Of a stretch of 64,000 nucleotides of DNA, positions 3,387 through 25,982 are shown in pieces; the first letter of the stretch is position 1; each line of letters begins with the position of its first letter. Below the pieces are notes generated by a model that was not told the origin of the DNA, ran no database searches, and saw nothing but the letters and a program-made list of their open reading frames with translations. The translations under genes and the position numbers were made by a program. The stretch spans positions 62,001 through 126,000 of IMG/VR virus record IMGVR_UViG_3300048924_000191. The stretch is one strand, 5' to 3'.

Positions 3387-4208
3387 TTACAGGGCGAAGT
3401 GGTAGAGCTGTCCTACGTCACCGACGTCGAGGAGCGGGTACGAGGTAGCTGATACCGAGAGGACCGGAACGTTAGCCCGCCCGACGTATGCGGAGCGCGA
3501 GAAGGTCATAGTTACGGTGAAGGTCTTTTCACGGCATGGGGTTACCTTGATCGGCAGCCCAATTCCGAAACGATGTAGCACTTCATCTACCGACAATAGA
3601 TACAACTGGTGTTGTTCGATCAGATACAGGTCGTTCTGATGCTTAACGTGGAAGAGACGATTGATTTCGTCTTGCAGATCTTTACGCAGTGCGATTCCGA
3701 AACCTGCTTCGAACCCGTCATTGATTGCTGCATTACGCAGGACGTTGTGCGGGGTGTTCGGGGTGTGGACGTGGTAGGCATGGCCGTAATCCGGGAGTTG
3801 GAAGACCACCTTCCGGAAGTCTCGCAACCACTCCAGAGCACTGACGATGGAAGTTTCCTTCACGCCACTCAGCGCCAGGCCCATGATCCCGTCAACAGGA
3901 GGGTTGTTGAGCACGTCATGGAATTCGACGTGAGGGTATTTACCGATCAACTCCTTCAACTTGCCATCATCGTCGATCGCCGCCCGTGCCAGCTCACGTA
4001 CCTGGTAGTTGCTGGTCGCAGCGTCCAGGTCGGCGATGACTTGCTTGATAGCTTCCGCACGACCTACGGCAATGGTACCGATACCACGGTAACCGATCAC
4101 TAAGTTGCTGATGTTGCGCACCGCTGTTTCTACAGCGTTGAGAGGACGGCGCGGCCAGTTACTTACGGCGTTAACGACACGGCGTTCTTCAGGGGACAGA
4201 TAGTTCAT
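3387..4208 (-). CDS. Hypothetical protein
   Basis: 273-aa ORF, AGGAG RBS, early-type promoter upstream. Confidence 0.75.
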   Translation of the reverse strand: MNYLSPEERRVVNAVSNWPRRPLNAVETAVRNISNLVIGYRGIGTIAVGRAEAIKQVIADLDAATSNYQVRELARAAIDDDGKLKELIGKYPHVEFHDVLNNPPVDGIMGLALSGVKETSIVSALEWLRDFRKVVFQLPDYGHAYHVHTPNTPHNVLRNAAINDGFEAGFGIALRKDLQDEINRLFHVKHQNDLYLIEQHQLYLLSVDEVLHRFGIGLPIKVTPCREKTFTVTMTFSRSAYVGRANVPVLSVSATSYPLLDVGDVGQLYHFAL

Positions 4209-4244
4209 TTGTCTTGCTCCTAATGGATGATGGTTAATCAAGAC

Positions 4245-22195: not shown

Positions 22196-22804
22196 TTAAC
22201 GATACTGGTAGGTGGTATCGAGGGTGAGACGGACCAGTTGACGATTGGTGTCTTGGCTGACGACGTGGCCTTCGTGGATGAAGGTAGAGTTGCCGAGGTA
22301 CGTGATGTTCTCCTCGAGCCAGAAGTTTTCCATCTTGCTGAATTGATCACGCAGGTGTTCGCAATCACCGCCACGCCCTGCTGCGCCGTCTACCGTACCG
22401 ACGAATGCTTCGCACGCCATGAAGGTGCTGGCCATGACCACACCGCCCAGATCCGAGTGGTATTGCAGGCGCTGTTGTTCTTCAGTCAGAAGGCGGCCCG
22501 GAGTACCGTTCAGCCAGCCGCCTGAGCTACCCCAACCAAACAGGTAGTTACCGTCGATGTGTACGCCGCCACGGCGCAGTTTGTTGCTCTTCTTCAGGAA
22601 CTGTTCGTCGATGGTGACGTAGAACCCGGTGTGCGCTGGGATACCTGCGTCCTGGAGCATCTTGTCGATCACGGAGTGGTATTGTTCAGGTACGCCTTGC
22701 AGCGGATGACCCACCAGATTGCGAGCCATGTAAACCTGCGCACCGGTGAATTCTGGGAAAGTAACTTGACCTACAGCGCGTGCTTTGGAATGAAGTTGCG
22801 ACAT
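22196..22804 (-). CDS. Putative 2OG-Fe(II) oxygenase-like protein
   Basis: RRGGVHIDG (HxD), distal HE, RQLVRL. Confidence 0.6.
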   Translation of the reverse strand: MSQLHSKARAVGQVTFPEFTGAQVYMARNLVGHPLQGVPEQYHSVIDKMLQDAGIPAHTGFYVTIDEQFLKKSNKLRRGGVHIDGNYLFGWGSSGGWLNGTPGRLLTEEQQRLQYHSDLGGVVMASTFMACEAFVGTVDGAAGRGGDCEHLRDQFSKMENFWLEENITYLGNSTFIHEGHVVSQDTNRQLVRLTLDTTYQYR

Positions 22805-22849
22805 GTTTTGTATCTCCATTTAGAAAAGTTGCGGCATAAAGAAAAGAAA

Positions 22850-23504
22850 TACCGCCCCTGTCCTTCGCTTGGTCGAGAACTCAGGCGCACGCCCTGGCTG
22901 TTCAACTCAATTTATGAATTGAACAGTGGCGAACGGCTGGAACTCCGGCCGGAAGGCATTTACTTCGGGGCGGTGGGTGCTTCTATACTCGACGGTCTGT
23001 AGGTGCTTAGTCAGCATGTTGCTTAAGCCCGCTACCCAGGCAGATTGTCGTCGTGGTATTGCGACATCACACAGATGTCTGGTTTTGGCCGGTCATCCCG
23101 TACCTGAGGTGTGACTATCTACGCTCATCAGTGAACTGTCGTCTGCCAGAAGTTCAAAGGCGTCAGGGAGTCTGGTCCGTGCCTAACCAGGTTCCAATGA
23201 CCTGTGGCTCGGGGGCGAGGGGCGCGAAGCGAGCGCTGTGATTTACGCTGAGTCAAAAGTATCGCGGAGCTGGCGCCCTTGCCTGACAGTACCCGGAGTA
23301 CTGGGACAACGAACAGCGGCTTTCGCAAAACCTTCGGAGAGAGCCGGGCCGTCAACGAATATACGAAGACGGGCCGAGTGTCGTCCCAAAGGATCATCCA
23401 GACCGAGCGGATCTTAACAGCGAAGCTTCGGAGTAACTGAACCAAACGATCCATGGCTCTCCTTAGCGTGCGGCGGTGGTTTTACATATAATGGCACATC
23501 GCCG
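22850..23504. ncRNA. Candidate large structured RNA region (~650 nt)
   Basis: Dense nested inverted repeats; 22850-23127 has no convincing ORF; overlapping ORF 23128-23454 is doubtful. Confidence 0.45.
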
Positions 23505-23511
23505 TAAGTAG

Positions 23512-23757
23512 TTACAAGAACGAGGTCTTCTTGACCGTTACGAAGTCTTTGTGGAACTCCACGGTCTTGCCCGGGTAGAGCTTCTTGACCAGTTTCATTG
23601 CCAGCTTGTCCTTGGTAGCCGCTGGGAGAACGCCTACCAGCACGACACGATTGTCGTGTTCTTCCACCACGAAGGATGGATTGCGAATCGGATCGACGTG
23701 CGTCCACGAGAACACGTTGTTGCCGGCATGTTGTTTCTTGTACTGCGTCTTGTCCAT
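23512..23757 (-). CDS. Hypothetical protein
   Basis: AGGA RBS, operon context. Confidence 0.7.
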   Translation of the reverse strand: MDKTQYKKQHAGNNVFSWTHVDPIRNPSFVVEEHDNRVVLVGVLPAATKDKLAMKLVKKLYPGKTVEFHKDFVTVKKTSFL

Positions 23758-24848: not shown

Positions 24849-25982
24849 TTAACGTCCGCCGAAGCCTGCGCGCTGGCGACCTTTGCGGAATTCGAGGTTC
24901 TCGTGCCAGTTCAGAGCTTCTGCGAGGGTGAACTTGTTGCGACCTTCTGGGAAGACCACCTCGTGTTCGCAGTGCATCATTTCGCGAACCGCGATCGCCT
25001 GCTCCAGATCCAGGTGTTTGAACTCCAGGATGTCGAAGCAACGACCACCACGGGTGAGCGCCTCGTCGACCTTGTGGAGACTTTCCAGGTTGGTCGAGAT
25101 GATGATCTTGGTATCACGAGAAACGATACCGTTTGCCGCGCTGAGCATCGCCTGCATGTTGGAGTTACCCAGATCACGAGCTTCGACCAACTTGTCGGAG
25201 TCTTCGGTAACGAAGATTGCACCAGAACGCAGACCGCGGATGTAGTCAGCCAGAGATGGGTTCAGGAGAACGTCTTCACGGTCAGCCATGTGGGCGTTAT
25301 CGTCAGCGAAGTTTGCGACGTGCAGAAGCTCGGTAATCCAGTTGGACTTGCCGGTGCCTGGCGGACCGATCAGCAGGACGACGTTGGAGTTGGACGCCTT
25401 GAACTCCTGCCAGAAAGCGGCCGGTAATTGACGCGGTTCGAAGTACGGGTACATCTTCTGGATATCGGAGATCGCTTGCCGTGGAGCAATCGGTTCCCAG
25501 CCCGGGATGATACCGCCGTTACCGTTCAGGGTCAGACGGGTCATGACCGGCACTTTATCCGACTTGGCCAGTTCGGCGAATTGACCGGTGACGTAGTCCA
25601 CCAGCTTCTTACCGCCCAGCAGGTCGTAGAACGCTTTGGTGTTCTCGTTCTTGACGTTCACCAGGGCACCGAACACTTCATCGTCAGAAACGATCAGGCG
25701 GCCCATGATGACGCGAACGAAGCGCAGACCTGCGGGCTTGAGGATCTCTTCTTCGAAGATCCGCAAGATGACCGTGTCGTTGTCTTCCGGTTTGATATTC
25801 AGCGGAACGTTGGTCTCCAGCTTCTTCTGCACGCAGTTGATACCACGGCCTGCAAAGAACAGGCGAGATACGTCGTACAGGTTGTCGCCGCGCAGCAGCG
25901 CCAGACGCTCGGAGAAGAAGTGGATCTCTTCCAGCAGTTTCTGGGAGGCTTGTGGTTCACGGAAAATATTCAGATTAGTCAT
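24849..25982 (-). CDS. AAA+ ATPase
   Basis: GPPGTGKS, FVTEDSD (Walker B), IISTN...DEALTRGGRCFD (second region of homology). Confidence 0.88.
   Translation of the reverse strand: MTNLNIFREPQASQKLLEEIHFFSERLALLRGDNLYDVSRLFFAGRGINCVQKKLETNVPLNIKPEDNDTVILRIFEEEILKPAGLRFVRVIMGRLIVSDDEVFGALVNVKNENTKAFYDLLGGKKLVDYVTGQFAELAKSDKVPVMTRLTLNGNGGIIPGWEPIAPRQAISDIQKMYPYFEPRQLPAAFWQEFKASNSNVVLLIGPPGTGKSNWITELLHVANFADDNAHMADREDVLLNPSLADYIRGLRSGAIFVTEDSDKLVEARDLGNSNMQAMLSAANGIVSRDTKIIISTNLESLHKVDEALTRGGRCFDILEFKHLDLEQAIAVREMMHCEHEVVFPEGRNKFTLAEALNWHENLEFRKGRQRAGFGGR

What the first reader, a model, noticed from the sequence alone, without database searches (positions are those of the whole stretch)
22850..23504. 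~650-nt densely base-paired region, candidate large structured RNA
Seen: nested stems across the stretch: ACCGCCCC/GGGGCGGT enclosing CCTTC/GAAGG, CTGTTCAA/TTGAACAG and CGGCTGG/CCGGCCG; TGTCG/CGACA; TCACAC/GTGTGA; TGAACT/AGTTCA; CAGGT/ACCTG; GGCGAGG..GCGC/GCGCCCTTGCC; CAGTAC/GTACTG; TGGGAC/GTCCCA enclosing CGGCTTTC/GAGAGCCG and CCGTC/GACGG; CGGCGGTG/CATCGCCG. Strand evidence conflicts: most G-U pairs favour plus, but minus has ATTATATG at 23485-23492 (same 8-mer as ncRNA 2) and a T-run plus TATGC at about 22835-22850. The overlapping 108-aa ORF has an RBS but atypical R/S/P/L-rich composition. Inference: a large phage ncRNA in the size class of ROOL/GOLLD-type RNAs, possibly a new class.
Basis: partly seen in the sequence, partly recalled or inferred. 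Interest (0 to 1): 0.72.

Follow-up and report, generated by a model that had tools for sequence, protein, structure and literature searches.

The report
New structured RNA in jumbo phages
The flagged stretch is one short minus-strand transcript of an uncultured giant (phiKZ-like) phage: its first half carries a small, fast-changing gene, and its last ~370 bases are a folded RNA conserved through compensating base changes in seven phage lineages and matching no described RNA family.

Summary
Single-sequence folding is only marginally better than shuffles (z -1.4 to -2.3). Comparison with 10 homologues in 7 lineages of uncultured jumbo phages splits the region in two. (1) Window 22831-23206, MINUS strand: a conserved multi-helix RNA (H0-H4 plus a branched terminator domain). 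In the H1-H3 core, 96.8% of cells are paired against about 30% in slid controls, and 13 of 27 pairs show double changes. Further covariation occurs in H0, H4 and the closing stem. Invariant G-U pairs fix the strand. There is no Rfam 15 match in any homologue. (2) Window 23207-23485: a phiKZ-type middle-promoter-like site, a ribosome-binding site and a small ORF. The ORF stays open in all 7 lineages (86-112 aa) but evolves very fast. The unit ends in a phiKZ-type terminator whose 4-nt loop is replaced by about 108 nt. So this is a new structured RNA family fused to a small ORF, not a 650-nt ROOL/GOLLD-like RNA. Its function is unknown. My best guess is a protein-binding 3' domain or a processed stable RNA. 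No expression data could be obtained.

The parts
23504..23515 (-). GTAA-N4-TTAC box, about 20-30 nt upstream of the inferred start. It resembles the phiKZ middle-promoter element and overlaps the stop codon of the 81-aa gene.
   Evidence: Conserved in the homologues. The same box plus TATG recurs at least 5 more times on the minus strand of the phage's own genome. The phiKZ middle-promoter motif AAanTTACc lies near -24 (PMC4666361).
23485..23492 (-). ATTATATG. The TATG motif has its G at 23485, which is the inferred transcription start.
   Evidence: TATG or TATAG stands at the same place in all homologues. In phiKZ the G of TATG is +1 (PMC4666361). The start is inferred, not measured.
23459..23464 (-). 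Ribosome-binding site AAGGAG, within the family consensus UAAGGA.
   Evidence: Conserved in all 7 lineages, 5-8 nt before the start codon.
23128..23454 (-). Small ORF of 108 aa. Its last ~75 nt overlap H0 and H1, and its stop codon is the UGA of the H1 3' strand.
   Evidence: It is open in all 7 lineages (86-112 aa). Window versus L149 shows no third-position excess (7/6/7). L015-17 and L013/18 show a weak coding signature.
23272..23307 (-). Conserved ~36-nt block inside the ORF that contains hairpin H-1 (23287-23303).
   Evidence: Nearly identical in the window, L149, L157 and L161, while the rest of the ORF is about 60% identical. Changes fall only in the loop or give G-U. It also reads as the peptide PVLRVLSG, so whether the constraint is on RNA or on protein is unresolved.
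23188..23204 (-). H0: 5-bp hairpin with loop YRUUGGA.
   Evidence: Alignment A9: 97% of cells paired, 3 of 5 pairs with double changes, slid controls 11-54%.
23113..23172 (-). H1: long hairpin with invariant internal loops and bulges. It holds an 18-nt and a 22-nt block identical or nearly so across the lineages that have this H1.
   Evidence: The distal helix and the basal helix covary. The invariant blocks are read in different frames, or not read at all, in different lineages.
23087..23104 (-). H2: hairpin CGG-GAURA-CCG with a covarying 3-bp extension.
   Evidence: Present in all 11 sequences.
23063..23079 (-). H3: 6-bp hairpin with the loop UGUGU in most members.
   Evidence: Eight different stem sequences with the same loop in most. 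There is a compensatory A-U to G-C change between the window and L149.
22990..23053 (-). H4: long irregular hairpin with a conserved AAGCAACA loop segment.
   Evidence: Pairs 10/75 (C-G to U-A) and 19/69 (U-A to C-G) covary, and there are several G-U/G-C swaps. It is shortened in L013/L018 and L157.
22978..22988 (-). Linker J4/5, with the conserved motif GUAGA(N)G.
   Evidence: Conserved in the alignments. A similar GUAGAU stands in the H1 3' strand.
22851..22974 (-). P5 domain: an 8-bp closing stem (22967-22974 with 22851-22858) around ~108 nt of lineage-specific hairpins.
   Evidence: The closing stem covaries at 3 positions. Its sequence resembles the phiKZ terminator stem CCYCCCC/GGGRRGG (PMC10914365).
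22831..22850 (-). U-rich tract plus TTATGCCGC, the tail of a phiKZ-type intrinsic terminator and the inferred 3' end of the transcript.
   Evidence: Identical or nearly so in all homologues. A hairpin followed by T(T/G)TATGCYGC recurs in the phage's own genome. The phiKZ terminator motif ends in YTTATKYYGT.

Best explanation
The region is one transcription unit of about 650 nt on the minus strand of a phiKZ-like (Chimalliviridae-type) jumbo phage. A middle-class phage promoter starts transcription near 23485. A 31-nt leader with a ribosome-binding site is followed by a small, rapidly evolving ORF. From the last codons of that ORF onward, the transcript folds into a conserved domain of about 345-375 nt: H0, H1, H2, H3, H4 and a branched P5. 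The closing stem of P5 plus the U-tract and TTAT motif form the phage's usual intrinsic terminator.

The part under the strongest selection is this RNA domain, not the protein. I propose that it works at the RNA level as a specific recognition platform. The invariant internal loops of H1 and the loops of H2 and H3 would bind a phage or host protein, or conceivably a small ligand. The RNA would act either while still attached to its mRNA or after being clipped off as a stable terminator-protected RNA, in the way 3'-UTR-derived or dual-function RNAs do.

Shown here: the sequence conservation, the covariation, the strand, the motif matches and the absence from Rfam. Inferred: the transcript ends, translation of the ORF, any processing, and the binding function.
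For: - Eleven homologues in 7 lineages share the same order of promoter, RBS, ORF, RNA and terminator.
- H1-H3: 96.8% of 279 cells are paired, 13 of 27 pairs have double changes, 0 of 500 shuffles reach this, and slid controls give 29-35%. On the plain MAFFT alignment the value is 94.4%.
- H0: 97% paired, with 3 of 5 pairs showing double changes.
- H4 and P5 show compensatory pairs.
- The RNA part is more conserved than the adjoining ORF: 97% against 83% nt identity in L015/L017 and in L013/L018.
- The invariant H1 blocks are read in different frames, or lie beyond the stop codon, in different lineages, so coding cannot explain them.
- Invariant G-U pairs fix the minus strand.
- The promoter and terminator motifs match those measured in phiKZ and recur in the phage's own genome.
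- The phage is phiKZ-like: its AAA ATPase is a homologue of PHIKZ208.
- There is no Rfam hit at gathering or E-value thresholds in the window or in 6 homologues, and no tRNA or tmRNA.
Against: - There is no expression evidence. The only RNA-labelled run holds two short contigs and is probably DNA.
- Only 7 lineages are known, and the best pair statistics come from an alignment fitted to the model.
- Folding energy is barely better than shuffles.
- Between the window and its 94%-identical relative, the RNA half is no more conserved than the ORF half: 16 changes in 278 nt against 20 in 327 nt.
- Three related complete jumbo phage genomes, plus Phabio and Noxifer, lack the element, so it is dispensable.
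- The binding-platform function is a guess. No partner was identified.
Confidence: 0.5

Rival explanations
1. A purely cis-acting 3' untranslated region. The domain would be an over-grown terminator and stability element that protects the small-ORF mRNA from 3' exonucleases. It might also act as an attenuator or riboswitch-like leader that sets how much transcription reads through into the next gene (the 177-aa gene in relatives, the 202-aa gene in the window).
For: P5 plus the U-tract and TTAT is the phage's standard terminator with an expanded loop. The element always sits directly upstream of another gene. In 4 of 7 lineages that gene is the same 177-179-aa family, counting L161, where a 31-aa ORF intervenes. 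Longer terminator stems are reported to terminate better in 201phi2-1.
Against: Simple protection or termination does not need about 220 nt of upstream helices with invariant internal loops. No conserved alternative (anti-terminator) pairing was found. The downstream gene differs among lineages and is absent in the window.
Confidence: 0.25
2. One reading: the whole ~650 nt is a free-standing large non-coding RNA, and the ORF is not translated.
For: The window's ORF shows no third-position excess against L149 (7/6/7; 11 nonsynonymous to 7 synonymous codons). Codon-position profiles are flat against L157 and L161. Its predicted fold is poor, with pLDDT 0.45. The best-conserved peptide blocks coincide with RNA hairpins H-1, H0 and H1. 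The distance from the start to the end of H0 is exactly 298 nt in four sequences of three lineages.
Against: An ORF of 86-112 codons starts at a conserved RBS and start codon in all 7 lineages, although the sequences have diverged to under 25% amino-acid identity. By my estimate, chance openness is about 3% per lineage. Indels are multiples of three. Three lineages have a clear N-terminal hydrophobic helix. L015-17 and L013/18 show a third-position excess. Most stems proposed in the 5' half are not conserved.
Confidence: 0.15
3. A DNA-level element, such as a replication origin primed by the middle-promoter transcript, a packaging site, or a cluster of protein-binding sites. Under this reading the conservation reflects DNA recognition rather than RNA folding.
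For: Long invariant blocks (18 and 22 nt) and a palindromic GTAA-N4-TTAC box are present. Phage T4 origins combine a middle promoter with a downstream element (my own knowledge).
Against: Compensatory changes preserve pairing in six helices, and invariant G-U pairs are strand-specific. Both point to RNA. There is no GC-skew inflection or AT-rich unwinding element. Three related complete genomes lack the element.
Confidence: 0.05
4. An ordinary protein-coding gene plus chance structure, with no functional RNA.
For: An ORF with an RBS exists, and the folding z-scores are weak.
Against: The conserved core lies beyond or out of frame with the ORF in several lineages. No ORF spans H2-P5. Covariation is far above the controls.
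Confidence: 0.03

Closest known systems
phiKZ-type intrinsic terminators (motif BCCYCCCC-HWWD-GGGRRGG-B-YTTATKYYGT; PMC10914365)
   Same: The P5 closing stem (ACCGCCCC/GGGGCGGU; CCACCCC/GGGGUGG in relatives) and the following TTATGCYGC match the stem and the TTAT tail. The same punctuation recurs in the phage's own genome.
   Different: The 4-nt loop is replaced by about 108 nt of branched hairpins. An extra U-rich spacer is present. About 220 nt of conserved helices precede it.
Dual-function RNAs and 3'-UTR-derived small RNAs (RNAIII/hld, SgrS/SgrT, CpxQ; my own knowledge)
   Same: One transcript carries a small ORF together with a conserved structured RNA part that shares the mRNA's terminator.
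   Different: There is no sequence relation. The RNA part is larger (about 350 nt). No target, processing site or chaperone link is known. The host is a nucleus-forming-type jumbo phage.
ROOL and GOLLD large ornate RNAs (Rfam; PMC12286853)
   Same: They are phage-associated, multi-helix, of unknown function and found by comparative analysis.
   Different: No match to their covariance models. This RNA is half their size or less and is fused to an ORF. It occurs only in a narrow group of soil and rhizosphere jumbo phages.
Jumbo-phage small RNAs from ONT-cappable-seq (201phi2-1 sRNA005 and the phiKZ sRNA upstream of gp182; PMC11512511)
   Same: These are conserved non-coding RNA elements in phiKZ-like phages, bounded by phage promoters and terminators.
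   Different: Those are under 250 nt and derive from the 5' UTR of a tail gene. This one lies 3' of a small ORF in a different genome region, and no sequence similarity to cultured phages was found.
Type I toxin mRNAs such as hok (my own knowledge)
   Same: A small, partly hydrophobic ORF sits on a highly structured mRNA with a long folded 3' part.
   Different: No antisense RNA was seen. 5'-3' end pairing is not conserved across lineages. The ORFs are longer (86-112 aa), and in the window the ORF product is not hydrophobic.

Membership tests
Any Rfam 15 family (including ROOL, GOLLD, HEARO, hammerhead, tmRNA, riboswitches) | A score at or near the family's covariance-model threshold. | tested here: not met
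   There were 0 hits at gathering thresholds in the window. At E-value up to 10 the region gave only chance miRNA hairpin hits on the 12-bp palindrome. There were no hits inside the element in 6 homologues.
Hammerhead ribozyme | A conserved CUGANGA core plus GAAA around three helices. | tested here: not met
   The window has CUGAUGA in the H1 3' strand, but all other lineages have CUGAUAA or UUGAUAA. There is no Rfam hammerhead hit.
tRNA / tmRNA | A cloverleaf or tRNA-like domain with a tag reading frame. | tested here: not met
   ARAGORN finds none in the whole window.
phiKZ-type intrinsic terminator | A GC-rich CCYCCCC/GGGRRGG stem followed by YTTATKYYG. | tested here: met
   The P5 stem and TTATGCCGC at 22831-22858 and 22967-22974.
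phiKZ-type intrinsic terminator | A short (about 4 nt) loop, i.e. a simple hairpin. | tested here: not met
   About 108 nt of branched structure lie between the two strands.
phiKZ-type intrinsic terminator | Transcripts end there. | not testable with these tools
   No usable RNA reads were available.
phiKZ-type middle promoter | A TTAC-containing element near -24 plus TATG with G at +1. | tested here: met
   By sequence only: TTAC lies at -22 to -19 relative to G 23485. Promoter activity was not tested.
3'-UTR-derived or dual-function RNA | The RNA part shares the mRNA's terminator and lies 3' of a translated ORF. | tested here: inconclusive
   The architecture fits. Translation of the ORF is inferred from conserved openness only.
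3'-UTR-derived or dual-function RNA | A discrete processed RNA accumulates and acts in trans. | not testable with these tools
   This needs a northern blot or RNA-seq of an infection.
Riboswitch or attenuator leader | A conserved aptamer, mutually exclusive terminator and anti-terminator pairings, and a consistently regulated downstream gene. | tested here: inconclusive
   A conserved domain upstream of a terminator is present. No conserved alternative pairing was found by inspection. The downstream gene is the same family in only 4 of 7 lineages.
CsrA/RsmA-sponge RNA | Many GGA motifs exposed in hairpin loops. | tested here: not met
   Only the H0 loop (5 of 7 lineages) and H2 carry a GGA. 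This was judged by inspection.

The most novel reading that the evidence does not exclude
H0-H4 would be a new class of functional phage RNA specific to nucleus-forming-type jumbo phages. It could be a ribonucleoprotein core, a decoy or a ligand sensor, with the invariant H1 loops as the active or binding site. It would be made as the tail of a small-protein mRNA, so that translation of the ORF into H0/H1 and folding of the RNA are mutually coupled. That would make it a dual-function RNA involved in host takeover, mRNA handling around the phage nucleus, or counter-defence.
Probability: 0.25. Interest if true: 0.8.

Novelty: new member of a known kind. Interest (0 to 1): 0.55.

Why it matters
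Few structured RNAs are known in jumbo phages, and those described so far are short 5'-UTR fragments. This is a multi-helix RNA of about 350 nt with clear covariation, invariant internal loops and defined promoter and terminator marks. It is therefore a ready candidate for probing, pull-down and structure work. It also shows that the phiKZ terminator hairpin can be elaborated into a larger domain. The fixed coupling to a fast-evolving small ORF suggests a dual-function transcript, a type rarely documented in phages. The element is absent from several relatives, which points to an accessory role such as host-specific takeover or counter-defence rather than a core function.

Tried and rejected
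- Degraded gene. The 117-122-aa gene that occupies this position in relatives L002-L004 leaves no trace in the window (tblastn).
- Repeat or second copy. There is one copy in the 243-kb genome.
- The weak model hit in related genome G001 (19.8 bits) lies inside a 96-aa ORF and matches only H2, so it is chance.
- Broader pattern scans of IMG/VR added no members. The genome-contig scan returned only chance matches.
- Hammerhead or box C/D-like reading of CUGAUGA. The G is an A in the other lineages.
- Pairing of J4/5 (GUAUAGA) with the TTATGC tail, proposed by RNAalifold, is not possible in L013/L018.
- hok-like pairing of the 5' leader (CCACCGCC) with the P5 3' strand is plausible in 2-3 lineages and absent in the others.
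- Pairing of the RBS with CCUU in H1 gives only 4 bp.
- Replication origin. There is no skew inflection.
- Functional link to the neighbouring 177-aa protein. That gene is missing from the window's genome. The family is large (at least 1996 clusters), has a confident model (pLDDT 86), and has no PDB or Pfam match.
- Atlas look-ups of the small ORFs gave nothing above chance.
- RNA evidence. The single read-laying run gave DNA contigs only. Its variant table was truncated before the region, so the relative's sequence was recovered through its protein cluster instead.

Full report
**Setting.** The window is bases 62001-126000 of a 243,378-bp virus record with direct terminal repeats. Its AAA ATPase at 24849-25982 is a homologue of phiKZ gp208 and of a Phabio protein. 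The only DNA match among cultured phages is a 57-nt piece of the flanking gene in Pseudomonas phage Noxifer, a member of Chimalliviridae. Runs that hold the sequence are root, rhizosphere, soil and plastic metagenomes. The flagged stretch is a 692-nt gap (22820-23511) between two minus-strand genes. These are a 207-aa protein of PHROG 8970 and an 81-aa protein. The only sizeable ORF in the gap has 108 aa, at 23128-23454 on the minus strand.

**Checking the observation.** Folding energy alone is weak evidence. The z-scores are -1.97 (+) and -1.43 (-) for the 692 nt. For the conserved 367 nt they are -1.94 (-) and -2.28 (+). Rfam 15 gives nothing at gathering thresholds. At permissive E-values it gives only chance miRNA hits on the 12-bp palindrome. 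ARAGORN finds no tRNA or tmRNA.

**Finding relatives.**
- Three complete jumbo phages share the flanking gene at about 80% amino-acid identity but have a 117-122-aa gene in place of the gap. They show no trace of the region by BLAST or by covariance model.
- A more distant metagenome contig (L013) showed collinear islands of identity. An 18-mer and a 20-mer from these islands retrieved L015-L018 from IMG/VR.
- A sequencing run held a relative about 94% identical. Its contigs (L149, L150) were recovered through the protein cluster of the 81-aa gene. L151 is a 99% relative.
- In L149 a 177-aa gene sits between the element and the 202-aa gene. Homologues of that protein led to four further carriers: L157, L160, L161 and L159.
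- The total is 11 sequences in 7 lineages, all from uncultured jumbo-phage-sized contigs. The element is single-copy in its own genome. It is absent from Phabio and Noxifer.

**Common architecture** (all on the strand of the flanking genes, the window's minus strand).
1. A GTAA-N4-TTAC box and, 13-16 nt later, TATG (TATAG in two lineages).
2. After 26-32 nt of leader, UAAGGA and a start codon.
3. An ORF of 86-112 codons.
4. A conserved RNA domain.
5. A U-rich tract and TTATGCYGC.

In phiKZ the late-promoter TATG has its G at +1, and middle promoters carry AAanTTACc near -24, some of them with TATG as well (PMC4666361). The window has TTAC at -22 to -19 relative to G 23485. The same box plus TATG recurs at least five more times on the minus strand of this genome. 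In phiKZ, 61 intrinsic terminators share the motif BCCYCCCC-HWWD-GGGRRGG-B-YTTATKYYGT (PMC10914365). In this genome, hairpins followed by T(T/G)TATGCYGC recur, mostly on the minus strand. The element's closing stem plus tail fits this motif, except that about 108 nt replace the 4-nt loop. I therefore infer a transcript running from about 23485 to about 22836.

**The RNA domain.** Coordinates are.

| Element | Window coordinates (minus strand) |
|---|---|
| H0 | 23188-23204 |
| H1 | 23113-23172 |
| H2 | 23087-23104 |
| H3 | 23063-23079 |
| H4 | 22990-23053 |
| Linker with GUAGA(N)G | 22978-22988 |
| P5 closing stem | 22967-22974 with 22851-22858 |

- H1-H3 on a plain MAFFT alignment of 8 sequences: 94.4% of cells pair, against 29-36% when partners are slid, and 7 pairs have double changes.
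- H1-H3 with all 11 sequences aligned to the model built from that alignment: 96.8% pair, 13 of 27 pairs have double changes, and no shuffle out of 500 reaches the observed covariation score. Slid controls give 29-35%. That alignment leans towards the model, which is why I give the MAFFT result as well.
- H3 has eight different stem sequences under a mostly constant UGUGU loop. It includes an A-U to G-C swap between the window and its 94% relative.
- H0 pairs in 97% of cells, with three pair types at one position.
- H4 and P5 have compensatory pairs.
- Wobble pairs that never vary (G12-U58 in 10 of 10 sequences, U79-G92 in 6) would be mismatches on the other strand, so the RNA is minus-sense.
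- The two invariant blocks of H1 cannot be explained by coding. In the window and L157 they are read in one frame each, and the two frames differ. In L015-17 the ORF stops at the first UGA of H1. In L013/18, L159 and L160 the ORF ends before H1.
- In pairs of close relatives the RNA part is 97% identical while the ORF is 83%.
- L161 and L159 have a diverged H1 that keeps CUCCCUG and a covarying basal helix.
- The interior of P5 and the distal part of H4 are lineage-specific.

**The 5' half.** Arguments for a real, translated ORF:
- It starts at a conserved RBS and start codon in all seven lineages and stays open for 86-112 codons, although identity falls below 25%. With about 4% stop codons expected per codon, that is roughly a 3% chance per lineage (my estimate).
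- Indels between lineages are multiples of three, and the distance from the start to the end of H0 is exactly 298 nt in four sequences.
- Three lineages begin with a hydrophobic helix.
- L015-17 and L013/18 show a third-position excess of 22-24 against 10-18.

Arguments against ordinary purifying selection:
- Window versus L149 gives 7/6/7 changes by codon position and 11 nonsynonymous to 7 synonymous codons. The flanking 202-aa gene takes 83 nucleotide changes for about 10 amino-acid changes.
- Profiles against L157 and L161 are flat.
- The Atlas model of the window's protein is poor, and no family is found.
- The conserved peptide blocks coincide with RNA hairpins H-1, H0 and H1.

I conclude that the frame is maintained and probably translated, but that its sequence is under weak or diversifying constraint. 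The others are broken in L149 or L157, or lie across the transcription start.

**How it may work.** Shown: a conserved, covarying minus-sense RNA domain bounded by phiKZ-type signals. Inferred: the transcript ends, translation and function. The invariant internal loops of H1 and the constant loops of H2 and H3, set in helices whose sequences drift freely, are the pattern expected of a specific recognition surface. The terminator-embedded 3' end would protect a processed fragment. I therefore favour a protein-binding, or less likely ligand-binding, RNA that acts as the tail of its mRNA or as a clipped-off stable RNA. A purely cis role in stability, termination or read-through control is the main rival. 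Stop codons in two frames inside H1 end every ORF that reaches it. Ribosomes would therefore unwind H0/H1 but not H2-P5, which hints at coupling between translation and folding. I could not test this.

**Comparison and novelty.** No Rfam family, cultured phage or paper found in five searches describes this element. Known jumbo-phage small RNAs are shorter 5'-UTR products (PMC11512511). The element is not a member of ROOL or GOLLD. It is best filed as a new family within the known kind of structured, terminator-linked phage RNAs and dual-function transcripts. It has a narrow distribution and is dispensable.

**Limits.** There are only seven lineages and no RNA data. The read laying variant table was cut before the region. 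Public collections could be scanned only with exact patterns, so the family's true range is unknown.

Noticed in passing
It opens a stretch of about 300 nt with no convincing ORF, ahead of the 284-aa gene at 3387-4241. This is a possible long leader or another non-coding RNA. The covariance model R1 does not match it.
   Followed up: partly
L149:5968-6501, L016:7137-7673, L017:3694-4230, L157:2501-3034: A 177-179-aa protein (N-terminus MASWNP...) lies directly downstream of the RNA in three lineages and after a 31-aa ORF in a fourth (L161). It lies within 2 kb in two more lineages and is absent from the window's genome. The family is very large (at least 1996 clusters at about 60-85% identity) with many invariant Trp, Arg and Gln residues. 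The model is confident (pLDDT 86). There is no Pfam, PHROG or PDB match. Its AlphaFold DB relatives are unnamed and include entries from eukaryotes.
   Followed up: partly
window 22804-22819: The 207-aa gene probably starts at the ATG at 22804 (MSQLHSK...) and so encodes 202 aa. All relatives start there, and a GGAG lies 9 nt upstream. The ATG at 22819 lies within the GGAG-containing spacer.
   Followed up: partly
window 22809-22850 versus L149/L150: A relative about 94% identical has 649 extra bases here (the 177-aa gene with its own ribosome-binding site). The breakpoint falls exactly at the end of the P5 stem. Genes are therefore gained or lost at the terminator boundary.
   Followed up: yes
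own genome (G000), for example window 301, 30599 (+), 56082 and 77603: Simple GC-rich hairpins followed by T(T/G)TATGCYGC recur, 13 of 15 on the minus strand. This is the same punctuation as the published phiKZ terminator motif and is useful for annotating transcription units in this phage.
   Followed up: partly
L002-L004, positions ~3620-3996: Related jumbo phages carry a conserved 117-122-aa gene (…RRRVVATMYRGKSKEVIM…) immediately upstream of the PHROG 8970 gene, where the window has the ORF-RNA unit. This looks like alternative cassettes at one locus.
   Followed up: no
L161:2040-2075 and L159:1365-1395: The two most divergent carriers share an extra conserved hairpin (…ACCCCUCCA.UACAGCUCCCUG) in place of the standard 5' part of H1. 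This may be a second subtype of the family. Only one IMG/VR contig has it.
   Followed up: partly
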